Shown here piece after piece: positions 526 through 11,416 of a stretch of 64,000 nt of DNA. Where the stretch lies: IMG/VR virus record IMGVR_UViG_3300024308_000016, positions 124,001 through 188,000 of that record; one strand, 5' to 3'. Numbering within the stretch: position 1 is the stretch's first letter; each line of letters opens with the position of its first letter. Position numbers and translations under genes: made by a program. Below the pieces are notes generated by a model. The model did no database searches and was not told the origin of the DNA. It saw only the letters and a list, made by a program, of their open reading frames with translations.

Positions 526-2703
526 ATGGAGAATCTGGCAGCACAGATTATGCGTGGGGAGTTGCCGCCTCACCTGATCAATGAGCTGCGTCCTGAGTTC
601 GTGGGCGTACACGCCCTGAATCCGGGACTCGCCAGTAACAGCCCATCTCGCTCGACGATGATGAGCTCGCACATCTCTCAGCATTTGGTGACCGAGCACA
701 TGGATATTCCGCTGACCATAGCGGGACCCGAGGTGGAGTACAGCAAATACACCACTGCCAGCCGCATACCCTGCGACTGTACTGTGTTCGACACCATCGA
801 CCGCTATCCGCGCGGCATGAGCGAGAACTCTCTGAAGTTCAATCCGGAAACCCTGGTGTTTTACTGCGATGAAAACACCGGCGAGTACAACTTCATCAGT
901 GTGCCCTACCACGTCAGCCTGCATCAGTATTTCGGCTATAAGAATGTCAAAACTGATGCCATCAACCGATTGACGCCAGGCGCCTTCCTCAAAGAAGGCA
1001 CCGTGTTGGCCGATACACCCGGTAATGTGGGTAAGTTCTATACCGCGACGACCAACCTGAACGTGATGCTGGCCTCGGACGCCGGTGTGGCTGAGGACGG
1101 CATCATCGCATGTCGGGAGTCGTTGGACAAGCTCGCCTACAAGGTGTACGAAAAGCGAACAGCCTCCGTGGGTCTGAAGAAGTTCCCTGTGAACATCGGC
1201 GGGCCCGACGAGTACAAGTGCTTTTACGACATCGGTGACGAAGTTCCCATCTCCGGGGAATTGATGTACCTGCGCGAATATGTGCCGGGCTTGTCGCCCG
1301 TCATGATGAGTCGCAGGGCCACCCGAGAGGTGGACTATACGTTCGACGAAATTGTCTATGCGCGCCAAGGTGCCGTGGGCAAGGTCGTCGACATCCAAGT
1401 CATCGGCAATGCGGACACCATCCGCGCACTGCCGACGGAAATGACTGCGCAGTTCGAGAAGTATCGGCAAGCCGGTATTCGCTTCAATAAAGCGATCCTC
1501 GAGTTGGAAAAGCGCATGATCCGGGACAGTCGCCAACGCTTTGGCACTGAGTATCCCAAGATCAACTCTGCCTTGCAGCGCCTGTTGGTAGACGCTCGTG
1601 CGTTGACTAACCATGACGAAGCTCGCATGGGTAAGAGCCTGCAGCTTCTGATGAACCGAAATGTGCTCGACGAGTATCAAATCGAGTTCACGATCGAGTA
1701 CACCATTGTTCCCGATATCGGGTTCAAACTGACCAGTATTTCGGGCGATAAGGGAGTGATCACCTCGATCCTTCCCAAAAGCCAAATGCCTCGTGATGCC
1801 GACGGAAACATCGCCGATCTCGTCATGGCCCCAGATGGCACTGTAGCGCGGACCAACTATGCGCGCGGCTACCTCATGTATCTGGGTGGCGCTGCCCGCG
1901 ACATGAGCAAGAGACTGTACACGATGACCGGGCTTGATGCGCGCTGCTCGCCTGATGACGTCGAGTACATGGATGACGGACGCTTCAACCACGTGTGGTC
2001 GACGCTTATCCGTTACTACGACTGCATCCATCCCGACTTTGCGAAGGATATGGATGATCTGTCACCAGCAGACAAGCGCACTCATATCTTCGAGTGCTTG
2101 GAGGCGGGAGTGATCAACTTCCGGGATATCGCGTGTCCCAAGCCTTTGCCTGTCGCTGTCATGGACCTGGAGGCCATGTTCCCACAGACCTTCGGGCCTG
2201 TGACACATCAGCTGATCAACGCCGGTGTCACCGAAACCACCGTCAACGCCGTGCGCATCGCACCGCTGCCAATCATGCTGCTGGACAAAACCACTGACGA
2301 CACCCTGGTAGCAGCTACAGCCGCTCATGGTGCTTTTGGTGTTCTTACCAAGCACAACCAGACTGACCGGTACTCCAAGCCGTGGAAGGATTCTCCTCCA
2401 CGAGCACAAGGCGAGTCCGAGAACCGGACATACGCTACCCACTCCATGAGTCCGGAGATGGTAGCGGAGATGATGGACCGCTCCAACAACCCAGCTGTGC
2501 AGCTGGAGATGGTGCGCCAAATCGTCAACAGCGAGACCCCGGGATATATCGAGGACATCGTCGATCGAGACAAGTTCCCTCTCGGCAGCCCCAAGCCTCT
2601 GGAGTTGATGCACAACTTCTTCCAGTGCTACGGTGTGCGCTTCAGGTATGTGGCAGAAGACATGCGTGAAGTTATTAGGGATCACGTCAATACGATGCAT
2701 TGA
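526..2703 (+). CDS. Non-virion RNA polymerase beta subunit, C-terminal part (phiKZ gp71-73-like)
   Basis: 725 aa; FKLTSISGDKGVI matches the beta catalytic-lysine motif (K..RHG.KG), followed by DLVMAPDGTVARTN; GESE motif near the C-terminus; directly upstream of a beta'-like gene. Confidence 0.9.
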   Translation: MENLAAQIMRGELPPHLINELRPEFVGVHALNPGLASNSPSRSTMMSSHISQHLVTEHMDIPLTIAGPEVEYSKYTTASRIPCDCTVFDTIDRYPRGMSENSLKFNPETLVFYCDENTGEYNFISVPYHVSLHQYFGYKNVKTDAINRLTPGAFLKEGTVLADTPGNVGKFYTATTNLNVMLASDAGVAEDGIIACRESLDKLAYKVYEKRTASVGLKKFPVNIGGPDEYKCFYDIGDEVPISGELMYLREYVPGLSPVMMSRRATREVDYTFDEIVYARQGAVGKVVDIQVIGNADTIRALPTEMTAQFEKYRQAGIRFNKAILELEKRMIRDSRQRFGTEYPKINSALQRLLVDARALTNHDEARMGKSLQLLMNRNVLDEYQIEFTIEYTIVPDIGFKLTSISGDKGVITSILPKSQMPRDADGNIADLVMAPDGTVARTNYARGYLMYLGGAARDMSKRLYTMTGLDARCSPDDVEYMDDGRFNHVWSTLIRYYDCIHPDFAKDMDDLSPADKRTHIFECLEAGVINFRDIACPKPLPVAVMDLEAMFPQTFGPVTHQLINAGVTETTVNAVRIAPLPIMLLDKTTDDTLVAATAAHGAFGVLTKHNQTDRYSKPWKDSPPRAQGESENRTYATHSMSPEMVAEMMDRSNNPAVQLEMVRQIVNSETPGYIEDIVDRDKFPLGSPKPLELMHNFFQCYGVRFRYVAEDMREVIRDHVNTMH

Positions 2704-2720
2704 TAAACAAGAGAGCCTAA

Positions 2721-4760
2721 ATGTCGAATATCGCGAAAGCACGGGATTTCATTCACATGGATCCCGAGGAAGTGCTGAGTTATCCTAAGCGTTTCCAGAT
2801 GGAGTTTGACAATGGCGAGATCCGGGAAGTGCAGCGCAAGCTGACGTGGGCATCGATGTTCGCGTGGCGTATCTTGAGGAAGTTCCCCGGCACTCCGGTA
2901 CTTCCCGATCACCACTTCCAGTTTATCCTCGATGGCAAGAACCTGCAGTCGAGCACTCATAACAAGTGCGCGTCTAACATCTTCAAGACCATCGTGGGCG
3001 ACGGATTTATCTCGCCGGAAGATCGAGAGGTCTTCCAATACGAGGTGCAATGCTTCGTCAATGACCTGTACAACGGGTTGCGGGAGAAGTCGGGTCGACA
3101 CCTTCAGACCATCGACATCGTGGACTGTATCAAAGTGATGATGCACCCACCAGTGCTCGAAGCCTGGGTAAATGCAGAATCCACCCCTCGTGGGGTGGAC
3201 GCAGTAAACACCGTCATCAAGGATTCGATCTACAAGGACAAGGAGCTCAAGTACAACGGCATGGCCATGGCTATGCGTAGTGGCTCCGTCAAGGCCAACC
3301 AGGTCTACCAATCGGTGGGCGTTCGCGGTTTCCCGAAAGAGATCGATGGACGCATCTACCGCACGATGATCTTGTCCAACTACGTGTTTGGCATCACGAA
3401 CTTATATGAGTTCGCCGCTGACTCTCGTGGTTCGGCTGAGCACTTGATGGCCACTGAGAGCCCCTTGCAGGATTCGGAATACTTCTCCCGGCGCCTGCAG
3501 CTGCAAACGTGTGTGCTCGAGCGTATCGAGTATACTGACTGCGGCACGTCCAAGACCATCCCCTGGCTTGTCAAGCCGTCGGCCTACGACGAGTCCTCGG
3601 GTGATTTCTATCCAGGCGATCTGAAGTTCATGATCGGCAAGAAGTACATCGATCCCAAAACCGGTGGACTCAATACGATCTTCGGCTATGAAAAGCACCT
3701 GGAAGGCAAAACCATCCAAGTGCGTTCGGTGCTCACCTGTGAGCACTCCGACCCTCATGCCGTCTGTCAGGTCTGCTTCGGGATGACGGCCAACAACCAC
3801 TCCCGCTGGGCCAACGTGGGTGTGGTGGCCGCTACCACCATCGTGTCCAAGATCTCACAAAAGACCTTGTCTACCAAGCACCACATTGCATCGGGCCAGG
3901 GCTCGGGCATTGTGCTGAACTCGGCACTGAAGACCTACTTCCGGAGAGGTCCAAAGAACACCGACTATGTGCTGGAGAAAGATACGGCCACCTGGGGTCT
4001 CAAGCTCATCGTACCCAGAGATGGAGCACTGGGACTGGTGGACATCGAAAACATGGATGCCGATCTGGAAAAGCTCAACCCCGAGCGGATCACCGGCTTT
4101 GACATCATCCGGATGGTGGGCAAGAATCCTATCACCGGGGTGGAGTTCTCGGACTCGTTGACCGTGATGCAGGGCAACCGGATGGCGTCCATGAGCATCA
4201 AGCTGCTGCGCTATATCCAAAAGCACGGCAAGGAGATGGACAACCGCAACAACTTCGTGATCGACCTCAGGCACTGGGACTTCAACGATGTGCTGCTGAC
4301 GCTGCCTGACATTCAGGTGTCGTTCTCTGCGCACGGCAATGCGATCGCGGAAGTGATCGAGTCCAAGTTCTCCCAGATCTCGGAGCGCAACTCGGAAGAC
4401 GCACCTCTGCGTGTGCTCAACCAAGTGTTCGATATGGTCACTCCAAAGCTCGATGTGCCTTTTGTGGCATTCGAGTGCGTGGTCTATCCGTTGCAGGTTC
4501 CCCGACAAGGCAGTTACGCAATGAGTCGTGGGTCCCCCAACCCCGTGATGGGCATCGGCAAGGACCTGATCCTCAACCGCTCTATGGGCACAGCATGCGC
4601 TTACCAGGAATGGAAGTACAACATTCTGAGCCCTAAGAGCTACGTCAAGACCGGCAAACCCAGCACCGTGATGGATGTGTTCATCTGTCCGCGTGAGGTG
4701 GTCGCTGAGTTCAAGGCCCGTAAACTGGGACCTCACCGCATCAAGCGGCACGCTTTCTAA
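2721..4760 (+). CDS. Non-virion RNA polymerase beta' subunit, C-terminal part (phiKZ gp74-like)
   Basis: 679 aa; bridge-helix-like DSEYFSRRL, then DCGT, Zn site RSVLTC...C..CFG and trigger-loop-like GVVAATTIVSKISQKTLSTKH. Confidence 0.9.
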   Translation: MSNIAKARDFIHMDPEEVLSYPKRFQMEFDNGEIREVQRKLTWASMFAWRILRKFPGTPVLPDHHFQFILDGKNLQSSTHNKCASNIFKTIVGDGFISPEDREVFQYEVQCFVNDLYNGLREKSGRHLQTIDIVDCIKVMMHPPVLEAWVNAESTPRGVDAVNTVIKDSIYKDKELKYNGMAMAMRSGSVKANQVYQSVGVRGFPKEIDGRIYRTMILSNYVFGITNLYEFAADSRGSAEHLMATESPLQDSEYFSRRLQLQTCVLERIEYTDCGTSKTIPWLVKPSAYDESSGDFYPGDLKFMIGKKYIDPKTGGLNTIFGYEKHLEGKTIQVRSVLTCEHSDPHAVCQVCFGMTANNHSRWANVGVVAATTIVSKISQKTLSTKHHIASGQGSGIVLNSALKTYFRRGPKNTDYVLEKDTATWGLKLIVPRDGALGLVDIENMDADLEKLNPERITGFDIIRMVGKNPITGVEFSDSLTVMQGNRMASMSIKLLRYIQKHGKEMDNRNNFVIDLRHWDFNDVLLTLPDIQVSFSAHGNAIAEVIESKFSQISERNSEDAPLRVLNQVFDMVTPKLDVPFVAFECVVYPLQVPRQGSYAMSRGSPNPVMGIGKDLILNRSMGTACAYQEWKYNILSPKSYVKTGKPSTVMDVFICPREVVAEFKARKLGPHRIKRHAF

Positions 4761-4767
4761 GCACCAC

Positions 4768-4814
4768 TGATCCTCGGAGAGCTTCGGCTCTCCGGGGGTC
4801 AGCTCTTTTCTTTT
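4768..4814 (+). terminator. Intrinsic terminator
   Basis: TGATCCTCGGAGAGC-TTCG-GCTCTCCGGGGGTCA with a UUCG loop, then CTTTTCTTTT. Confidence 0.85.
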
Positions 4815-4861
4815 ATGACCCATGGAGGTTATCCACTGAGAGAATCTTTGAGGTAAACCGT

Positions 4862-7180
4862 ATGACTGTGACTGCTACTAAGCCCAGGAACCCATATGGA
4901 GAGCTCGCCATCTATTCCCACAGCTTCATCGTCAAGGGTCATTGTGACCGGGTGATCAAGGCCGCCCGCACGGTGCTTGATCGCTATAGCGAAAAGAAGT
5001 GGGAGAAGGTCAAAGTCGGAGACGGTGAGTTTGTCAACCGCCAAGTCATCGACAAGCGATACGGGACGGCGTTTCCCGATGGCGTCACTTTCCAGTTCCA
5101 CAAAGGGCAATTCAACGAATTCAAACAGCTGCTGCAGTCCATGGAGGTCTACATCGATGCCATGGACATCTACACAGCTCCTACCTACACGCCTCGAAAG
5201 GTGGAGTACGATCTTCGGGAAGGCCGGGTCCTTCGGGACTACCAAGACAATGCCAAGGAGTTTGCACGAGCCGACATCAGCTCGGGTGACCACTTCTCCA
5301 AACTGATCGCCATGCCCACGGGCACCGGCAAAGCTCTGAGTGCCGACACACTCATGGTCACCCGGGACAAGGGAGTGATCCCTTTAAAGGAAGTGATCGT
5401 GGGTGATGAGGTCATGGCGCCTGATGGCTCCTGGACTGTGGTGTTGGGTGTGTATCCCCAGGGGCTGAGGAAGTCCTGGACTGTCACGTTTTTGGACGGT
5501 CGCTCAGTGACATGCGATGCTGAGCATGACTGGGAAGTCATGAAGAATGGCTGTATGGACACCCAGGTGGTCAACACCGAACAGTTAGAAGAGCTGGTTC
5601 TCAGTGATCCGTACTGCGTGCCGTTCTTTGACCCACTGGTGTACTTCTCTGAGCGAGAGGACTACTACGAGGTCACGCAGGCGTTGGTGACAGCTGTGGA
5701 GCGCTCAGGCTTCATCCACGACGAGCAGTTGTACATCGACTGCCCGACTCCGGAAGCTGCCACTGCTTTGGTCGATCTTGCTCACTCCCTGGGTTCGATC
5801 GCAGCACTGAGTCAGATCCTTGCACAGGGCATGCAAGTGTTGGTGCACAATCGCTTCTTGGCCAAGACGCTGTATGAAGCGATCAATCCAGATCGCCGAG
5901 CAGGGATGACACAAGACGCCTACATCCGCAGGCAAACCAACATCACTGGAGTGCCGATCTCCCGTGTGGTGCCCGAGGATGTGTGTGACATGATCTGCAT
6001 CGAGGTCGATCACCATTCTCACCTGTTTGTGCTGGCCAACTTCATCGTCACCCACAATACCGTCACCAGCTGCGCCATCGCTGCTGAAGAAAAGACCCGC
6101 TGGCTCGTATCTGTATTGCCAAAGTACAAGGACAAGTGGGGCTCTGATGTGGTGGAGAACCTGAACCTCAAGCCCAAAGAGGTGATGATTGTAGAGAGCA
6201 CCGATCAGCTGCGTGGGCTGATTGACATGTGCAAGACCCACGGCACCAAGAAACTCCAACCCGTCATCGTTGTCACCTTGACTACGCTGGCGACATTTTT
6301 CAAGCTGTGGATGAAAGACCCGCAGGGCTGCATCGAGGACTATGGCTGTGAGCCTATGGACCTGTGGCGTATCTTGGACATCGGCACTGTGTCGGTGGAC
6401 GAAGCGCACGAGCACATCTACAGCATCTACTTGCTGGCGATGCACCTGCATGGACCCAAGTTCGTCTCCATGAGTGGCACCATGGTGGCGGAAGATCCCT
6501 TCGTTGAGATGATCCAGAAAATCATCTTCCCGATGGTCAAACGCTATGACCAAGTCAAGATGGGTAAGTACATCGACGTCGAGTTCCTGGGATTCTCCAT
6601 CAAGCGGGAATTCAGGCACAAGATCCGGTGCACGGCGTTCGGTAGAAACGACTACTCGCATGTGGAGTTCGAGAAGTCCATCATGCGCAACAAACTCGTC
6701 CTCAATGCCTGGCTCATCATGATCGAGGTCATGATCAGTTACAGCTACTACGACCGAAGGGTCAAGGGTGACAAGCTTGTCGTGTACGCCGCCACCACTG
6801 ACATGGTCAACATCTTGGTCAACCGCTTCAAGCAAACGTACCCGGATCTGGTGATCATGCGCTACGCCAAGACAGAAGGCGACAAGTACAAAAACATCCT
6901 GAGCGCCGACATCACGGGCTCAACGCTGCAGTCTTCTGGGACCGCGGTGGACATCCCCAATCTCATCACCGTCATCTGCACCACCATGGTCAACTCCGCC
7001 AGGACCAACTTGCAGATGCTGGGACGATTGCGGGATTTGGCCGGCAAGCAGATGAAGTGCCTGATGCCCTTTTGCAAGGACATCCCCAAGCACCGATCGT
7101 ACACGGCGTATCGAGCAGACTTGTTCCAAGACCGCTCTAAGTCCATCAAGACGTTCTACTACGACCGAGATCTCGGTTAA
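4862..7180 (+). CDS. SF2 (DEAH-like) helicase, phiKZ gp75-like, intein-containing
   Basis: 772 aa; LRDYQ Q-motif, Walker A MPTGTGK/T split by an intein, VDEAHE Walker B, SMSGT motif III, QMLGRLR motif VI. Confidence 0.9.
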   Translation: MTVTATKPRNPYGELAIYSHSFIVKGHCDRVIKAARTVLDRYSEKKWEKVKVGDGEFVNRQVIDKRYGTAFPDGVTFQFHKGQFNEFKQLLQSMEVYIDAMDIYTAPTYTPRKVEYDLREGRVLRDYQDNAKEFARADISSGDHFSKLIAMPTGTGKALSADTLMVTRDKGVIPLKEVIVGDEVMAPDGSWTVVLGVYPQGLRKSWTVTFLDGRSVTCDAEHDWEVMKNGCMDTQVVNTEQLEELVLSDPYCVPFFDPLVYFSEREDYYEVTQALVTAVERSGFIHDEQLYIDCPTPEAATALVDLAHSLGSIAALSQILAQGMQVLVHNRFLAKTLYEAINPDRRAGMTQDAYIRRQTNITGVPISRVVPEDVCDMICIEVDHHSHLFVLANFIVTHNTVTSCAIAAEEKTRWLVSVLPKYKDKWGSDVVENLNLKPKEVMIVESTDQLRGLIDMCKTHGTKKLQPVIVVTLTTLATFFKLWMKDPQGCIEDYGCEPMDLWRILDIGTVSVDEAHEHIYSIYLLAMHLHGPKFVSMSGTMVAEDPFVEMIQKIIFPMVKRYDQVKMGKYIDVEFLGFSIKREFRHKIRCTAFGRNDYSHVEFEKSIMRNKLVLNAWLIMIEVMISYSYYDRRVKGDKLVVYAATTDMVNILVNRFKQTYPDLVIMRYAKTEGDKYKNILSADITGSTLQSSGTAVDIPNLITVICTTMVNSARTNLQMLGRLRDLAGKQMKCLMPFCKDIPKHRSYTAYRADLFQDRSKSIKTFYYDRDLG
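5333..6058 (+). mobile_element. Class 3 (Ala1) intein, 242 aa, with a degenerate LAGLIDADG remnant
   Basis: Begins GK|ALSADT and ends FIVTHN|T. Block B is TCDAEHDW, block F is MICIEVD, block G is VTHN. Removal restores the P-loop GTGKT. Confidence 0.92.
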
Positions 7181-7186
7181 CACAGC

Positions 7187-7240
7187 AAAAGCTCCCTCTC
7201 TCCAGCCGCAAGGCTGGAGAGAGGTAGAGCTCTTTTTTTT
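7187..7240. terminator. Bidirectional terminator between convergent genes
   Basis: CTCTCTCCAGCC-GCAA-GGCTGGAGAGAG (7196-7223), with AAAA upstream and a T-tract downstream. Confidence 0.85.
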
Positions 7241-7245
7241 GTCCC

Positions 7246-7806
7246 TTATTGCAAAGGGATGCCGTAGACACGACTGATGTCGTTGTTGGTAGTGTTGATG
7301 CAAAAGTCCCGCACCCAGTTCACGTCCTGGTTGGTCTTCTCCCAAAGACGGGTGAAGTACGTGTCCGAACGCTCCATGTTGAAGGCGTCGTATGCTCTCA
7401 CCACCAAGTCCGAGATCTTGACGATCTCCCAGAGCGTGCCACCTGGCATCTTGGGGTTCAGGATCTGCGTGAGGCCGTTGATGTAAGTGGCGAAGAAGAT
7501 CTCGTACAGCTTGATGGGGTCAGGTAGATCACCCCAGCTGACGATGATCGGAGACTCCTTTTTGATGGGGTCGTACTTGTCACCGTGCGTCCATCCCTCG
7601 TTGATGAGATTGGAGTACCAGTGGTCGTGCATCTGAGGCGCTTTGGCGCCCGTCTGCATGCAATAGTCCGCCATCCCTGTGATCATGTTGCGCTGCCAGT
7701 AAGGCGTCTCTCCCCAGGTCTTCAAGTTGAAGGGATTGCCCGAGATGTCAGCGAACTGTTTAACAAAGCCGTAAGCCAGCTCCGTCATTGTAAAGAGGTT
7801 GCTCAT
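7246..7806 (-). CDS. RyR-domain (ryanodine-receptor repeat-like) phage protein
   Basis: 186 aa; HDHW...EGWTHGDKYDPIKKESPIIVSWGDLP fits the RyR repeat pattern H..W......GW.YG...D...K.HP.LV.Y..LP. Confidence 0.7.
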   Translation of the reverse strand: MSNLFTMTELAYGFVKQFADISGNPFNLKTWGETPYWQRNMITGMADYCMQTGAKAPQMHDHWYSNLINEGWTHGDKYDPIKKESPIIVSWGDLPDPIKLYEIFFATYINGLTQILNPKMPGGTLWEIVKISDLVVRAYDAFNMERSDTYFTRLWEKTNQDVNWVRDFCINTTNNDISRVYGIPLQ

Positions 7807-7825
7807 ATGCGGTCCTTATATAGAC

Positions 7826-7862
7826 AGCGCCTACCGCCTCCTTGCGGAGGCGATAGGGCTAT
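7826..7862 (-). terminator. Hairpin (GCAA loop on minus strand) after the 7879-8910 gene
   Basis: CGCCTCC-TTGC-GGAGGCG (7835-7852) plus extended pairing. Confidence 0.6.
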
Positions 7863-7878
7863 CGGAGATGCCCTTGTA

Positions 7879-8910
7879 TTAGGGCTTGCTGGTCTTGAGT
7901 TCCTTCAGACGCGCGTTGTCGATGAAGTTGCGCAGGCGGCCCAGCGCTTCGATCGACAGACCAGTCTGTGCATCAGCGGGGATGGTCACATCACGGGCGT
8001 GATCGGAAGCACAGGCCATCAGCACGTTCATCAGGCGAGTGAAGAGGTTGAACTGCTCGGGAGAGCGGCTCCACTCCTGGCCGCCACGCATGGCGTACAG
8101 AGGCGAGAAGCAGTGGTTGCGGTACTCGCGGAAGTACATGATGGCGATGCGCCACAGGCGATCGAATTCCAGCACGGGAGCGGTTTCCACCAGCTCGTAC
8201 AGCTTCAGGTACAGGCCTTCCTGAGCTTTCCTGATTTGCTCGGGTGTGCGCGGCCGACGAGGGGCCATGTCCACCACGTACTGGTTCAGGAAGTTGATCA
8301 GGCGGATCGCTGTTGGCGTGCCGCGGGCCAGCTCGTTGTTCACCAGGCCGGTGAATTCAGCACTGGGCTGGAAGTTGGCCACGATGACTTCAGGGCTTTC
8401 AGCACGCTTGGCCTTCATGGCGCTGTGCGTGGCCACGCGGCTTTGGTACGAAGGAGGAGAGGTGGGCTCTTCCACCTTAGGTTGCACGAGGGCAGGGGCC
8501 GGAGGCAGCGTGGTTTTGACTTCAGGCACAGCCAGCGTGGGTTCGGGGATGGCTGCGGCGCGCTCGGACGCTTCCACTTGGGTGGAGGGCTCCAGAGCCA
8601 CACGCTGCACGTTCACCACATCGCCTTCAGCGATACCGGCGACTTCCACAACCAGCTTGGTGGCGCCAGGATCGGGGCGATCGACCTTGTCGTCGCCAGG
8701 CAGGCCAGCGGGCAGGTCAGCAGCAGGAGCGCCCAAGGCGCCTTCATCTTCGACCACGGCGGGGGCTGCCGCTTCTTCGGGCTTGGCAGCTTCAGCAGCG
8801 GCAGCTTCGTCACGCTGCTGGGCCAGTGCCAGGGGATCGAGCACTTCGGTTTCGTGGCTCTTTGCACGGCCAGTGAAGCTGGCTGCATCGGGGCGGTTCT
8901 TGCGAGACAT
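7879..8910 (-). CDS. Conserved hypothetical protein of phiKZ-like phages
   Basis: 343 aa; Ala/Pro/Glu-rich N-terminal half and a helical C-terminal domain; codon usage like neighbouring genes; co-oriented cluster. Confidence 0.75.
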   Translation of the reverse strand: MSRKNRPDAASFTGRAKSHETEVLDPLALAQQRDEAAAAEAAKPEEAAAPAVVEDEGALGAPAADLPAGLPGDDKVDRPDPGATKLVVEVAGIAEGDVVNVQRVALEPSTQVEASERAAAIPEPTLAVPEVKTTLPPAPALVQPKVEEPTSPPSYQSRVATHSAMKAKRAESPEVIVANFQPSAEFTGLVNNELARGTPTAIRLINFLNQYVVDMAPRRPRTPEQIRKAQEGLYLKLYELVETAPVLEFDRLWRIAIMYFREYRNHCFSPLYAMRGGQEWSRSPEQFNLFTRLMNVLMACASDHARDVTIPADAQTGLSIEALGRLRNFIDNARLKELKTSKP

Positions 8911-8913
8911 GGA

Positions 8914-9783
8914 TCAGTTCTCCAGGTATTGCTTCAGGCGCTGTACAGCGCCCGGGTTGTTGAGATTGAAGACCGGGATCTTCATGGCTTGGCTCAATGC
9001 GGCGGCCAGACCAGCTTGTTGGGACTTGGGTCCACGGGTTTGCACCGACTCGACACCATCGTCCGACCAAATGATGGTCAGCTGGGCAGGCTCCTTGCAG
9101 TTCTTGCCCAGCACCATGCGCGTGGTCTTGAACCAGAAGGCTTGCTGCTTTTCATTGATCGAGCCCCACTCGGGCACGAAGCGACGAGTGAACTCCTTGC
9201 ACTCGTCGCCGTTGAACGTCGAGAATGCAGGGATGAAGTTGCCTTGTTGGTCCTTGAACTTCCAGGGCAGGTACACTTCAGCGCCGCGGCCAGCGATCTG
9301 GTGCGCCATGTCGTCGAATCCCTTGCCTTGGGAGACGCGGATGATGTAGCCGTGTTGGCGCAGCAGTGCCACCACTTCCTGCACCATGGGAGGGATGTGA
9401 TCCCGGCCTTCGGTGTTGTAGTTGCCCGTGAGCACCGCAGCCTTGGGGAGCACCAGTGCTTCGAGTTGCTGAGGGGTCAGAGGCGGCTTTTGGAAACGAT
9501 TGCCACCGCCACCGAATCCGCCACCGCCGCCGTAGCCGCCACCTTGGGGACGACCACCACCGTAGCCGCCACCGCCTCCACCATAGCCCGAAGAAGGAGC
9601 AGGAGCTTGGTAGCTGGGGGCAGGTGCTTGGTAAGCAGGAGCAGCAGGTGCCGGTGCCTGCACTGGGGCCTGGGGAGTGAAGCCCTCGCTGAAACCAGCG
9701 GGAGCTGCGGAGAAACCTGCGGGGGCAGGTGCTGGGGCTGCGGGCGCACCACCAGAAGAGTAACCGTTGTAGTAGTCAGACAT
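8914..9783 (-). CDS. DprA/SLOG-like protein with a Gly/Tyr/Pro-rich disordered N-terminus
   Basis: C-terminal GAEVYLPW...MVLG...P...IIWS.DG...IPVFNL pattern is typical of phage DprA-like SLOG proteins; SD AAGGAG upstream. Confidence 0.7.
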   Translation of the reverse strand: MSDYYNGYSSGGAPAAPAPAPAGFSAAPAGFSEGFTPQAPVQAPAPAAPAYQAPAPSYQAPAPSSGYGGGGGGYGGGRPQGGGYGGGGGFGGGGNRFQKPPLTPQQLEALVLPKAAVLTGNYNTEGRDHIPPMVQEVVALLRQHGYIIRVSQGKGFDDMAHQIAGRGAEVYLPWKFKDQQGNFIPAFSTFNGDECKEFTRRFVPEWGSINEKQQAFWFKTTRMVLGKNCKEPAQLTIIWSDDGVESVQTRGPKSQQAGLAAALSQAMKIPVFNLNNPGAVQRLKQYLEN

Positions 9784-9809
9784 GAGTGCTCCTTGAAATG
9801 CACCAGGGG

Positions 9810-9840
9810 AAAGAGACCGGATGAGGCCGAAGCCCCATCC
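9810..9840 (-). promoter_or_regulatory. UUCG-capped hairpin in the leader of the DprA-like gene
   Basis: Minus strand reads GGATGGGGC-TTCG-GCCTCATCC; a minus-strand TATG lies just upstream (about 9845-9848). Confidence 0.5.
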
Positions 9841-9870
9841 GTATACATAGGCCTTCGTCGGCTTTTGGCA

Positions 9871-10092
9871 TCAGTGAAATCTAGCAGTCAAATACGGACG
9901 CATATAAGTCGCTGCCGCCTCCACGCTCCACTCGGCCCAGTCACGAGCGTAGGGAGCAGCTGGATGCAGACGAACAAGGTCTGACGCAAAACCTTGGTAG
10001 ATTGAGGTCAGCTCTTGAGAGGCTGTCTCGCATAAAATGCGATAAGCCGGTAGTTTTTCTACCTGATTACGTAAATAGCGTATCAAGATCAA
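9871..10092 (-). CDS. Possible small hypothetical protein
   Basis: 73-aa ORF fills an otherwise empty 280-nt gap in a minus-strand cluster; TTG start; weak support. Confidence 0.3.
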   Translation of the reverse strand: MILIRYLRNQVEKLPAYRILCETASQELTSIYQGFASDLVRLHPAAPYARDWAEWSVEAAATYMRPYLTARFH

Positions 10093-11416
10093 AGTCGTTG
10101 ACCTTCAAAGCGTTGGTGTGCATGGCTTTCATGCGAGCTGCAAGGATAGCTGCGGAGATCTCGGTGAGCGGCAAAGCCACGCCCGTCTCATACCGAGCCA
10201 AAGCGTCACCTGCGCACGTCGAGCAGATACGTTCTCCTGGTGTTTTGCAGTACATGGGTGAGCGGGTGATCAGGGTCTGACCCAGGTACGCGCTCGTGTC
10301 TGCGTCCATGGGTACTTTGACTTGCTTGTTGCCGTAGATGATGGTGCGCCCTCGCAAGCTACCTACCAGCGACCGATCGTAGATGCGCTCCAGCCCCAAC
10401 TTGGAGCCACAATCACCTTGCACGATCACATAGTTGATAGCCGCATTGAGCATCTTCTTGGCAGCCACACCACCTTCCACGGTTTCTGCACCCCGGGAGA
10501 ACGAACCAGCACGAGCGCCATTGAAAGCTGCGACCAACTTGTCAGGCTGCCGGGGAATGCCCTCGGACAGGCTCTCGGTGATGGCGGTGATCTCACCCGC
10601 CTTGGCAAAGCCGCCTTCAGCACCCATGCCCAGGTACAGCTTCTTGCGTGAGTCGTTCAAGATCTTGCCAGATGTGAACTTCTTGAAGCTGGGGTCATCC
10701 TTGAGGTACTCGGCGTCATACGCTTTCAAGCGCTCCTCGTATTCAGCCAGCACAATGGGGTCGTTGAGTCGATCTCCGTACTCCTTGATGAGCTGTGCCT
10801 TGAACTTATCGATGCCCGTCGGAGGCATGATTGTCTTTTCGGTCAAAGCCACCGTAAACAACTCCATCACGGAGGCGAGTAGCTCAATGCCTTTGCTCAT
10901 GTTGTTGTTCTCGAACGCATAGATCGGTCCAGTAAAGTCCCGCTCCTTGATGGGTTCGAGTTGCTCGGGTGTGAGCGGTACATCGATGTTGTCGTAGTTG
11001 GGATCATTGGCCAGGCGAGGAGCGATCATTTTCTCGATGCCCGAGACGCTCACTTCGCCATTGATGTACGGCAGCTTGCCACCGAACACCTCCCAGATCA
11101 TGATGGCGTTGGTGATCAAGATCCCGAAGTCCGTCTCCACGGTACCTTCAATGTTCACCGCCCACGATTCATCGACCACCACCTTGTCCTGGGGAATGAA
11201 CAACGGGCCGCTTCCCGAGTAGTCGTCGATCTTGATCTTCTCGCCAGCCTCATCGAGAAAGAACAAACCTTGCATCTCCCGCATCGGGGTGTAGGGGTCA
11301 GTCGGCAGAGGCTGACCTGGAGGTTCGGCGAACTCGCTGAGATTACGGATGAGCCAATTGGCCTTCCGGTACAGCTTGTGCTTGAAGGCCAGTTTCAGAT
11401 ATTGGTTTTTCTTCAC
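10067..11416 (-). CDS. Virion RNA polymerase beta' C-terminal subunit (phiKZ gp80-like)
   Basis: 449 aa; GARAGSFSRGAETVEGG bridge-helix region, DCGS, RSPMYC...CSTCAG Zn site, ending MKAMH. Confidence 0.88.
   Translation of the reverse strand: MKKNQYLKLAFKHKLYRKANWLIRNLSEFAEPPGQPLPTDPYTPMREMQGLFFLDEAGEKIKIDDYSGSGPLFIPQDKVVVDESWAVNIEGTVETDFGILITNAIMIWEVFGGKLPYINGEVSVSGIEKMIAPRLANDPNYDNIDVPLTPEQLEPIKERDFTGPIYAFENNNMSKGIELLASVMELFTVALTEKTIMPPTGIDKFKAQLIKEYGDRLNDPIVLAEYEERLKAYDAEYLKDDPSFKKFTSGKILNDSRKKLYLGMGAEGGFAKAGEITAITESLSEGIPRQPDKLVAAFNGARAGSFSRGAETVEGGVAAKKMLNAAINYVIVQGDCGSKLGLERIYDRSLVGSLRGRTIIYGNKQVKVPMDADTSAYLGQTLITRSPMYCKTPGERICSTCAGDALARYETGVALPLTEISAAILAARMKAMHTNALKVNDFDLDTLFT

What the first reader, a model, noticed from the sequence alone, without database searches (positions are those of the whole stretch)
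5333..6058. Non-canonical class 3 intein in the helicase P-loop, with a decaying endonuclease
Seen: the intein starts with Ala (no N-terminal nucleophile) and carries the full class 3 WCT triplet: Trp in block B (EHDW), Cys in block F (MICIEV) and Thr in block G (VTHN), with Thr+1. At 242 aa it is between mini and full size. Its centre has only worn LAGLIDADG-like traces (LVTAVERSG, LAHSLG). Splicing is needed to restore Walker A GTGKT, so the intein could gate helicase activity. Conditional splicing through the catalytic Cys (redox or metal) is inference.
Basis: partly seen in the sequence, partly recalled or inferred. Interest (0 to 1): 0.6.

Follow-up and report, generated by a model that had tools for sequence, protein, structure and literature searches.

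The report
Class 3 intein in phage helicase
A self-excising protein insert (a class 3 intein with a dead, half-deleted homing endonuclease) splits the ATP-binding loop of a jumbo phage's single-copy helicase; it is a real, well-conserved new member of a known kind.

Summary
Window 5333-6058 encodes a 242-aa in-frame insert between Lys and Thr of the Walker A motif (GTGK|T) of a 772-aa SF2 helicase. The host is a 272-kb phiKZ-like jumbo phage from a metagenome.

Intein-less homologues read GxGK-T/S without a gap. 72 homologues carry an intein at this site. In all 72, His65, Trp67, Cys222, Thr240, His241 and Asn242 are invariant, while residue 1 varies. That is the class 3 signature.

The predicted structure (pLDDT 95.8) matches solved class 3 inteins (Z 20.1). 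It also contains one LAGLIDADG-fold half-domain.

Compared with 342-374-aa relatives, LAGLIDADG blocks C and D are deleted. Block E has decayed, with the catalytic Asp replaced by Ser125. The endonuclease is therefore dead. The remnant is not in free decay, because dN/dS is about 0.05.

The family shows the whole homing cycle: empty, full, half and mini alleles interleaved on the extein tree.

Conditional splicing has no specific support. The Cys48 redox partner and Tyr128 zinc ligand of the mycobacterial model are Ser48 and Phe232 here.

Verdict: a new member of a known kind, of modest interest.

The parts
4862..7180 (+). Helicase precursor gene: 772 aa plus stop. It encodes the SF2 (DEAH) helicase of phiKZ-like jumbo phages and is single-copy in the 272-kb genome.
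   Evidence: ORF. phrog_16 'DNA helicase' at E 2.3e-23. tblastn finds homologues in 298 phage records, almost all jumbo phages. No paralogue in the phage's own genome.
4862..5332 (+). N-extein, 157 aa. It ends with the first four residues of Walker A, G-T-G-K (5321-5332).
   Evidence: Intein-less alleles continue directly with Thr or Ser.
5333..6058 (+). Class 3 intein, 242 aa, running from Ala1 to Asn242.
5333..5629 (+). N-terminal part of the HINT splicing domain (residues 1-99). It holds block A and block B. Block B contains D62-x-x-H65 and W67 (His codon 5525-5527, Trp codon 5531-5533).
   Evidence: H65 and W67 are invariant in 72/72. The region aligns to class 3 DnaB inteins. Structural match at Z 20.1.
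5630..5950 (+). Remnant of the homing endonuclease (residues 100-206). It is one LAGLIDADG half-domain with an alpha-beta-beta-alpha-beta-beta-alpha fold. The block E remnant L-V-T-A-V-E-R-S-G lies at 5684-5710, with Ser125 in place of the catalytic Asp. Block H lies at 5768-5809. Blocks C and D are absent.
   Evidence: Alignment to 342-374-aa relatives. hhalign gives probability 93.7 and E 1.9e-7 to the second half of the full endonuclease profile. Secondary structure and pLDDT. Structural matches of residues 101-204 to WhiA (Z 8.0), I-DmoI (Z 6.9) and I-CreI (Z 6.2). dN/dS 0.054.
5951..6058 (+). C-terminal part of the HINT domain (residues 207-242). Block F holds the presumed initiating nucleophile Cys222 (5996-5998). 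Block G holds T240-H241-N242 (6050-6058).
   Evidence: C222, T240, H241 and N242 are invariant in 72/72..
6059..7177 (+). C-extein, 373 aa. It starts with Thr+1 (6059-6061), which is both the last Walker A residue and the second nucleophile. The DEAH box lies at 6398-6409.

Best explanation
Window 5333-6058 encodes a class 3 intein. It is inserted at the classic P-loop site, between the Lys and Thr of Walker A, in the single-copy SF2 helicase of a phiKZ-like jumbo phage. The precursor is translated as one 772-aa chain.

Inferred mechanism, taken from the class 3 inteins that have been studied:
1. Cys222 (block F, position 4) attacks the Lys157-Ala158 peptide bond. This forms the class-specific block F thioester branch. 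His65 and Trp67 assist.
2. The N-extein is passed to the hydroxyl of Thr+1.
3. Asn242 cyclises, helped by His241, and releases the intein.
4. An O-to-N shift leaves an intact G-T-G-K-T loop and an active 530-aa helicase.

The intein descends from a full-size (about 345 aa) LAGLIDADG intein of the same family. It has lost the first endonuclease half-domain and the catalytic Asp of the second, so it can no longer home by itself.

The surviving half-domain is kept folded by purifying selection. The most likely reason is that a misfolded insert would impair splicing of an essential helicase (the known 'HEN-HINT mutualism').

Shown here: the anatomy, conservation, predicted fold, selection and family history. 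Inferred: the chemistry, splicing competence and the reason the remnant is retained.
For: - Insertion point. 26 homologues read GxGK followed directly or nearly so by the C-extein: 19 with no extra residue (GxGK-T/S) and 7 with a 1-3-residue Gly-first difference. 72 carry an insert at the same point.
- Signature. H65, W67, C222, T240, H241 and N242 are invariant in 72/72. Residue 1 varies (A 37, L 15, M 5, S 3, F 3, E 2 and others). The +1 residue is Thr in 70 and Ser in 2.
- Sequence relatives with solved structures are the gp41-1 intein and the class 3 DnaB inteins of M. smegmatis and M. chimaera.
- The AlphaFold model has pLDDT 95.8 and pTM 0.90.
- Best structural matches are the class 3 MchDnaB-1 intein (Z 20.1, rmsd 1.9, 127 residues) and gp41-1 W/C variant 6riz (Z 19.1). 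PI-SceI aligns over 233 of 242 residues (Foldseek).
- Endonuclease remnant: plus LAGLIDADG structural matches for residues 101-204.
- Selection, window against its nearest relative: exteins dN/dS 0.007, intein 0.055, centre 0.054.
- The helicase is single-copy and the genome holds no other LAGLIDADG domain.
- Near-identical intein-bearing DNA occurs in three other studies. No intein-less joint was seen.
- The class 3 criteria and mechanism are taken from PMC3196547, PMC5222942 and PMC6195587.
- The K|T site is called the 'classic' P-loop insertion in PMC5050341.
- HEN-HINT mutualism and the homing cycle are described in PMC8966425.
Against: - No experiment shows splicing. All chemistry is inferred by homology.
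- The curated HMM libraries do not call it. Pfam Hom_end_hint gives E 0.53. NCBIfam intein_Cterm gives 12.7 bits against a cut-off of 15.6.
- The structure is a prediction.
- dS to the more distant relatives is saturated. The selection estimate therefore rests mainly on one close pair.
- Essentiality of the helicase is inferred from its conservation and single copy. It was not tested.
Confidence: 0.9

Rival explanations
1. The intein is a conditional switch. Oxidation or zinc reversibly blocks Cys222, so helicase activity, and with it phage replication, is gated by the state of the host cell. This is the model shown for the M. smegmatis DnaB intein.
For: - It has the same class, the same kind of site (a helicase P-loop) and the same D62-x-x-H65, W67 and block F Cys layout as Msm DnaBi1.
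- Any catalytic thiol can in principle be oxidised or bind zinc.
- Block F here is unusually rich in His (H227, H228, H230). H228 is found in only 4 of 72 relatives.
Against: - The disulfide partner Cys48 of Msm DnaBi1 is Ser48 here.
- The zinc ligand Tyr128 corresponds to Phe232 here.
- The other cysteines (61, 74, 95, 137, 218) are not conserved. Position 61 is Cys in 41 and Ala in 23 of 72, which fits a buried small residue. Position 218 is Cys in 3 of 72.
- Empty, mini, half and full alleles alternate among close relatives. This fits a selfish element better than a retained regulator.
Confidence: 0.12
2. The retained LAGLIDADG half-domain has been put to a new use, for example DNA binding as in WhiA. 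It might also still support mobility, either as a homodimer or with an endonuclease supplied in trans by a co-infecting relative.
For: - Purifying selection acts on the remnant.
- The best structural match of the remnant alone is the non-catalytic LAGLIDADG protein WhiA (Z 8.0, 26% identity over 83 residues).
- Every one of the 216-282-aa inteins at this site lost half 1 and kept half 2.
- The half-size intein clade is monophyletic (support 0.99), but it sits on exteins that are interleaved with other intein types.
- Synonymous divergence of the intein is 2.7 times that of the exteins. The divergent patch extends about 300 nt into both flanks, like a co-conversion tract.
Against: - No acidic residue stands at the catalytic position in any half-size relative.
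- The remnant is the fastest-evolving part of the protein. Its identity is 47% where the exteins are 84-88%, and it falls to 7-18% in the wider clade. That fits a constraint on folding better than a conserved binding surface.
- Other divergent patches exist elsewhere in the locus, so mosaic recombination is not specific to the intein.
- The phage's own genome holds no other LAGLIDADG domain.
Confidence: 0.2
3. The intein no longer splices, and the helicase gene is a disabled relic.
For: No direct evidence of splicing exists. One class 3-like intein (Arth_1007) is a documented pseudogene.
Against: - All catalytic residues are present, unlike in Arth_1007, which lacks Cys F4 and His B10.
- The frame is open for 772 codons.
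- Exteins have dN/dS 0.007 and the intein 0.055.
- The gene is single-copy and conserved across jumbo phages.
- The same intein lineage persists across relatives with 49-68% C-extein identity.
Confidence: 0.04

Closest known systems
M. smegmatis DnaB intein 1 (Msm DnaBi1, PDB 6BS8/6OWN) and M. chimaera MchDnaB-1 intein (6RIX/6RIY): class 3 inteins in the P-loop of the replicative helicase DnaB
   Same: - Ala1, D62-x-x-H65, W67, block F Cys, T-H-N at the C-terminus, and Ser/Thr at +1.
- Inserted in a helicase Walker A loop.
- Sequence E 2e-6 to 1e-4.
- Structural Z 20.1, rmsd 1.9, 28% identity.
   Different: - The host protein is an SF2 DEAH helicase of a jumbo phage, not the RecA-fold hexameric DnaB.
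- This intein is 242 aa with a folded LAGLIDADG half-domain, where the others are 139-145 aa with a disordered linker.
- It lacks Cys48 (Ser48) and Tyr128 (Phe232), the residues that mediate redox and zinc control in Msm DnaBi1.
Mycobacteriophage class 3 inteins (MP-Be DnaB, MP-Catera gp206; terminase and Cas4 inteins of actinobacteriophages)
   Same: - Phage-borne class 3 inteins with LAGLIDADG endonucleases, many in P-loops of ATPases.
- tblastn of this intein hits cluster C1 mycobacteriophage inteins at 38% identity over residues 1-102.
   Different: - A different extein family and a different host group (Gram-negative jumbo phages and their metagenomic kin).
- Here the endonuclease is half-deleted.
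gp41-1 intein (cyanophage-like metagenomic split intein; PDB 6QAZ, and its W/C variant 6RIZ)
   Same: The best sequence match among solved structures (E 6.7e-9). Structural Z 19.1. Also sits in a phage helicase.
   Different: gp41-1 is a naturally split class 1 intein with Cys1 and no endonuclease. The class 3-like residues in 6RIZ were engineered.
PhoVMA intein (PDB 7QST) and other inteins with degenerate endonucleases; the homing-cycle model
   Same: A LAGLIDADG endonuclease that has lost its catalytic Asp while keeping its fold. This is interpreted as a stage between fixation and deletion, possibly slowed by HEN-HINT mutualism.
   Different: PhoVMA keeps both half-domains. Here one whole half is gone, and the same one-sided loss recurs in about ten lineages of the family.
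WhiA (non-catalytic LAGLIDADG-fold transcription factor)
   Same: The best structural match of the remnant domain alone (Z 8.0). It is a LAGLIDADG scaffold without catalytic residues that is kept by selection.
   Different: WhiA has two LAGLIDADG domains plus a helix-turn-helix, and it is a free-standing protein. There is no evidence that the intein remnant binds DNA.

Membership tests
Class 3 intein | No Cys/Ser/Thr nucleophile is required at intein position 1 | tested here: met
   Ala1 (GCT, 5333-5335). Position 1 varies across the 72 family members: A, L, M, S, F, E, C, G, P and D.
Class 3 intein | Trp at block B position 12, two residues after the universal His B10 | tested here: met
   H65 and W67 are both invariant in 72/72. 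They carry the same numbers as in Msm DnaBi1.
Class 3 intein | Cys at block F position 4 (the initiating nucleophile) | tested here: met
   C222 is invariant in 72/72. It aligns to Cys118 of Msm DnaBi1.
Class 3 intein | Thr at block G position 5, followed by His G6 and Asn G7 | tested here: met
   T240-H241-N242 are invariant in 72/72.
Class 3 intein | Ser or Thr (rarely Cys) at +1 | tested here: met
   Thr+1 (6059-6061). In the family it is Thr in 70 and Ser in 2. Criterion from PMC5222942.
Class 3 intein | HINT fold | tested here: met
   The predicted model has pLDDT 95.8. Z 20.1 to the class 3 MchDnaB-1 intein and Z 14-19 to many other inteins. This rests on a prediction, not a solved structure.
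Class 3 intein | Splicing through a block F branched thioester intermediate; Cys F4 to Ala abolishes splicing | not testable with these tools
   Needs expression, mutagenesis and mass spectrometry.
Class 3 intein | Placement inside the monophyletic class 3 clade | tested here: inconclusive
   The nearest sequences with solved structures are class 3 DnaB inteins and gp41-1. No tree with a broad panel of class 1 inteins was built.
Active LAGLIDADG homing endonuclease | Two LAGLIDADG helices (two half-domains, or a homodimer), each with a catalytic Asp/Glu at motif position 8 | tested here: not met
   Only one half-domain is present. Blocks C and D are absent. Motif position 8 is Ser125. All 342-374-aa relatives but P0081 keep D-T-D-G in block E, and all but P0081 and P0053 keep L-G-D-G in block C.
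Active LAGLIDADG homing endonuclease | alpha-beta-beta-alpha-beta-beta-alpha core fold | tested here: met
   DSSP on the model gives H109-125, E126-129, E132-137, H140-151, E156-160, E167-172 and H177-183. Z 5-8 to WhiA, I-DmoI, I-CreI and I-MsoI over residues 101-204.
Redox- or zinc-gated intein of the Msm DnaBi1 type | A non-catalytic Cys48 that forms a disulfide with Cys F4 | tested here: not met
   Ser48 here. Criterion from PMC6195587.
Redox- or zinc-gated intein of the Msm DnaBi1 type | A zinc site formed by Cys F4, the next backbone residue and the Tyr128 hydroxyl | tested here: not met
   Tyr128 aligns to Phe232 here. In the family this position is Tyr in 53 and Phe in 19. Criterion from PMC7360933.
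Classic P-loop intein insertion | [quoted passage not shown] | tested here: met
   G-T-G-K | intein | T. Empty alleles read GxGK-T/S. Described as the classic site in PMC5050341.

The most novel reading that the evidence does not exclude
The jumbo-phage helicase P-loop hosts a large, so far undescribed class 3 intein family. In it, endonuclease decay is directional: about ten lineages independently deleted the first LAGLIDADG half and kept the second, catalytically dead half under purifying selection. One possibility is that the splicing domain has come to depend on that half. Another is that the half has a new role, such as DNA binding or mobilisation in trans. In the second case, half-endonuclease inteins like this one could still move between helicase alleles.
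Probability: 0.25. Interest if true: 0.5.

Novelty: new member of a known kind. Interest (0 to 1): 0.3.

Why it matters
The intein itself is a textbook-conforming class 3 intein at the classic P-loop site. It adds a member, not a principle.

Three things give it modest value.

1. It belongs to a family of at least 72 inteins at one site of a core jumbo-phage helicase. That family shows every stage of the homing cycle side by side: empty, full, half and mini. This makes a good natural system for studying how endonucleases decay and whether splicing domains become dependent on them.

2. Standard HMM libraries miss the intein. Its presence also misleads annotation: relatives of this helicase are labelled 'terminase large subunit' or 'DarB-like antirestriction'.

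3. Compact class 3 inteins with a Thr at +1 are useful parts for protein engineering.

Tried and rejected
- Pfam and NCBIfam scans gave only sub-threshold hints. Hom_end_hint scored E 0.53. intein_Cterm scored 12.7 bits against a cut-off of 15.6. ResIII scored E 0.009.
- The PHROG hits to 'terminase', 'primase' and 'DnaC-like loader' fall on the intein, not the helicase. I reject them as a description of the host protein.
- megablast against phage records found nothing.
- The search for related loci in IMG/VR with the C-extein found no close relative.
- A search of the phage's own genome found no LAGLIDADG_3 domain, no second intein of this family and no helicase paralogue.
- The antisense ORFs over the intein (5705-6835, 5239-5577 and 6019-6201, minus strand) have no Pfam match. 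There is therefore no sign of an out-of-frame or antisense endonuclease of the kind reported in actinobacteriophages.
- The G+C content of the intein equals that of its flanks, so there is no sign of recent foreign origin.
- Read laying on four runs showed no joint that skips the intein. These were contigs only, so a rare empty allele is not excluded.
- Class 2 splicing (direct attack by the +1 residue) is rejected. The W/C/T triplet is present, and in the class 3 inteins tested so far the +1 residue cannot initiate splicing.
- Tori and Perler 2011 (PMC3133030) is not held in the library.
- I did not run the large representative protein search. I also did not fold the remnant alone, because the whole-model search already listed LAGLIDADG folds for residues 101-204.
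Full report
**Where the window lies.** The window is bases 124001-188000 of a 272,393-base virus record, which CheckV rates 100% complete. The genes next to the finding are split RNA-polymerase beta and beta-prime subunits typical of phiKZ-like jumbo phages. The best run that holds the stretch is a subsurface metagenome, which may be its source.

**The observation.** ORF 4862-7180 (+) encodes 772 aa.
- Residues 154-157 are G-T-G-K.
- Residue 158 (5333-5335) is Ala.
- The following 242 residues end in V-T-H-N (6047-6058).
- The next residue is Thr (6059-6061).

Inside the insert I find E64-H65-D66-W67, M220-I221-C222-I223-E224-V225 and T240-H241-N242.

**Is it an insert, and exactly there?** One word-indexed protein search with the whole precursor returned 170 homologues. 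I aligned the best 97 with the query.
- 26 of 98 sequences read GxGK followed directly or nearly so by the C-extein: 19 with no extra residue (GxGK-T/S) and 7 with a 1-3-residue Gly-first difference. Their total length is 499-537 aa.
- 72 carry an insert of 138-374 aa at precisely that point.

The ligated product would therefore carry an intact Walker A loop, G-T-G-K-T. A DEAH box follows at residues 513-516.

- The C-extein was searched by reference.
- The extein tree uses C-extein columns only.
- The N-extein was not searched on its own.

**Class.** Across the 72 inserts the invariant positions are R57, H65, W67, C222, I223, V239, T240, H241 and N242.
- Position 1 is A in 37, L in 15, M in 5, S in 3, F in 3 and E in 2, with other residues in the rest.
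- The +1 residue is Thr in 70 and Ser in 2.

These are the published class 3 criteria: no N-terminal nucleophile needed, Trp B12, Cys F4, Thr G5, and Ser/Thr at +1 (PMC3196547; PMC5222942).

The numbering D62-x-x-H65 and W67 coincides with that of the M. smegmatis DnaB intein 1.

phmmer against PDB sequences finds inteins at the top:
- the gp41-1 intein variant 6riz at E 6.7e-9;
- Msm DnaBi1 (6bs8) at E 2e-6;
- MchDnaB-1 (6rix, 6riy) at E 5e-5 to 1e-4.

The curated HMM libraries miss it.

**Structure.** I folded the intein with an alignment of 63 sequences (A1). AlphaFold2 gives pLDDT 95.8 and pTM 0.90.

An exhaustive structural comparison puts these on top (Foldseek agrees):
- the class 3 MchDnaB-1 intein: Z 20.1, rmsd 1.9 over 127 residues, 28% identity;
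- gp41-1 W/C variant 6riz (the entry's title lists C1A, F65W, D107C): Z 19.1.

Full-size endonuclease inteins align over nearly the whole model: PI-SceI over 233 of 242 residues and PI-PfuI over 230.

Residues 101-204 alone match LAGLIDADG proteins:
- WhiA, Z 8.0;
- I-DmoI, Z 6.9;
- I-CreI, Z 6.2;
- I-Vdi141I, E-DreI and I-MsoI, Z 5.2-5.5.

Individually these Z values are middling. Together, and alongside the sequence evidence, they are consistent. DSSP on the model shows a clean alpha-beta-beta-alpha-beta-beta-alpha unit.

**The endonuclease.** I aligned the intein with its 342-374-aa relatives, which carry Pfam LAGLIDADG_3. All but one keep D-T-D-G in block E, and all but two keep L-G-D-G in block C.
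- The window's intein lacks the whole first half-domain, blocks C and D. It has 0 residues there, against about 90 in the full-size forms.
- It keeps the second half: 75 of 84 positions.
- 'LVTAVERSG' aligns column for column with the second LAGLIDADG motif. The catalytic Asp at motif position 8 is Ser125.
- 'LVDLAHSLGSIAAL' is block H. The block names follow PMC5050341.

As an independent check, I compared two profiles: the 14 half-size inteins' centres against the full endonuclease region of the 29 inteins of 342 aa or more. hhalign gives probability 93.7% and E 1.9e-7. The match maps to the second half only.

With one half-domain and no catalytic acid, the endonuclease is dead. The genome holds no other LAGLIDADG_3 domain. 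The antisense ORFs over the intein match nothing.

**Is the remnant decaying?** I compared the window with its nearest relative (locus L007, 98% protein identity) using Nei-Gojobori counts.

| Region | Synonymous differences | Non-synonymous differences | dS | dN/dS |
|---|---|---|---|---|
| Exteins | 67 | 2 | 0.22 | 0.007 |
| Whole intein | 69 | 18 | 0.60 | 0.055 |
| Centre | 32 | 8 | not given | 0.054 |

The centre departs from neutrality with p 8e-14. So the remnant is constrained.

It is still the fastest-evolving segment. Against a 77%-identical relative, the centre is 47% identical, the HINT parts are 60-72% and the exteins are 84-88%. In the wider clade the centre falls to 7-18%.

This pattern fits selection for a folded, non-disruptive insert. 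It matches the 'HEN-HINT mutualism' discussed in PMC8966425. It fits a conserved binding surface less well.

**Family history.**
- On a C-extein tree, empty, mini, half-size and full-size alleles are interleaved down to near-identical exteins. One example is a 515-aa empty allele next to 216-aa and 345-aa intein alleles. Another is an empty allele nested inside the window's own subclade.
- On a tree of the splicing-domain columns, the window's intein belongs to a monophyletic group of 14 half-size inteins (227-249 aa, support 0.99). The other 216-282-aa inteins branch separately next to full-size ones, in about ten lineages. Several of those sister relations have support of 0.9 or more.
- Every one of these intermediate forms lost half 1 and kept half 2. 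None shows the reverse.
- If the lineages are independent, this one-sidedness is unlikely by chance: p 0.06 for five lineages and p 0.001 for eleven. Independence rests on a quick tree, so I treat the result as a lead.

**Exchange.**
- The intein's synonymous divergence is 2.7 times that of the exteins in the closest pair (Fisher p 2e-7).
- The low-identity patch (84.7-94% per 150-nt window) spans about 5060-6410. That is the intein plus roughly 300 nt of each flank, as a co-conversion tract would look.
- Similar patches occur elsewhere in the locus (1462-2061 and 9262-9711). Ordinary mosaic recombination between related phages is therefore an equally good reading.
- G+C content is the same as in the flanks.
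- Contigs from three other studies bridge both intein junctions at 95-99% identity. No contig skips the intein.

**Conditional splicing.**
- There, peroxide drives a Cys48-Cys118 disulfide (PMC6195587).
- Zinc is bound by Cys118, the backbone of Val119 and the hydroxyl of Tyr128 (PMC7360933).
- Here the aligned residues are Ser48 and Phe232.
- No second cysteine is conserved. Position 61 is Cys or Ala. Position 218 is Cys in 3 of 72.

What remains is the generic sensitivity of a thiol nucleophile, plus an unusual run of histidines (H227, H228, H230) next to Cys222. I put the probability of a physiologically meaningful switch at about 0.1.

Before splicing, the insertion certainly splits the P-loop. 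The statement that helicase activity depends on splicing is therefore a sound inference. The gene is single-copy and is conserved in 298 phage records.

**Comparison with what is known.** Class 3 inteins, their proposed phage origin, P-loop insertion between Lys and Thr, and endonuclease degeneration within the homing cycle are all established.

In the held literature I found no description of this intein family in the phiKZ-like helicase. Isolated phages clearly carry it:
- Xanthomonas phage RTH11 has a full-size class 3 intein with both LAGLIDADG motifs.
- Serratia/Klebsiella phage KpZh_1 has a short one.
- Pseudomonas phage EL and others also match.

Their records label the gene helicase, terminase or DarB-like.

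**Verdict.** The finding is a genuine class 3 intein with a half-deleted, catalytically dead LAGLIDADG endonuclease. It is a new member of a known kind. The regulatory idea is unsupported. The family-level pattern of one-sided endonuclease loss is the most interesting by-product.

Noticed in passing
window 5333-5600 (intein residues about 12-85) within ORF 4862-7180: The PHROG families named 'terminase large subunit' (phrog_19299, phrog_15), 'DNA primase' (phrog_510) and 'DnaC-like helicase loader' (phrog_50) hit only the intein part of the helicase. GenBank records of relatives label the same helicase 'terminase large subunit' or 'DarB-like antirestriction'. Inteins embedded in the profiles probably spread these wrong names.
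   Followed up: partly
window 526-2703 (+), 2721-4760 (+), 10067-11416 (-): These are split RNA-polymerase beta and beta-prime-like subunits (phrog_3295, phrog_3015, phrog_2962; E 1e-100 to 1e-150). They mark the phage as phiKZ-like. The gene order RNAP-RNAP-helicase is kept in the three closest metagenomic relatives.
   Followed up: partly
window 862-11180 against locus L007: The closest relative is a mosaic. Stretches of 100% identity alternate with patches of 85-93% identity at 1462-2061, 4012-4161, 5060-6410 and 9262-9711. This suggests frequent recombination among co-circulating phages.
   Followed up: partly
proteins P0029, P0092 (Cys1) and P0019, P0034, P0085 (Ser1): Five inteins at the same helicase site start with Cys or Ser yet keep the full W/C/T triplet. 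They would be natural test cases for whether a position-1 nucleophile is used when Cys F4 is present.
   Followed up: no
all 216-282-aa inteins of the family (for example P0037, P0016, P0015, P0054, P0061, P0080, P0083): Every intermediate-size intein lost the first LAGLIDADG half-domain and kept the second. In each, block E has degenerated and block H (R-S-L-G-G) is conserved. None shows the opposite pattern.
   Followed up: partly
window 8914-9783 (-) and 7246-7806 (-): The first is a 289-aa protein with a Gly/Pro/Ala-rich N-terminal half and a DprA-like C-terminal domain (phrog_768, E 9e-14). The second is a 186-aa protein with a weak RyR-domain hit in its relatives.
   Followed up: no
window 5705-6835 (-): A 376-codon antisense open frame overlaps the intein's 3' part and the C-extein. 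It has no Pfam match and is probably a by-product of 55% G+C coding sequence.
   Followed up: yes
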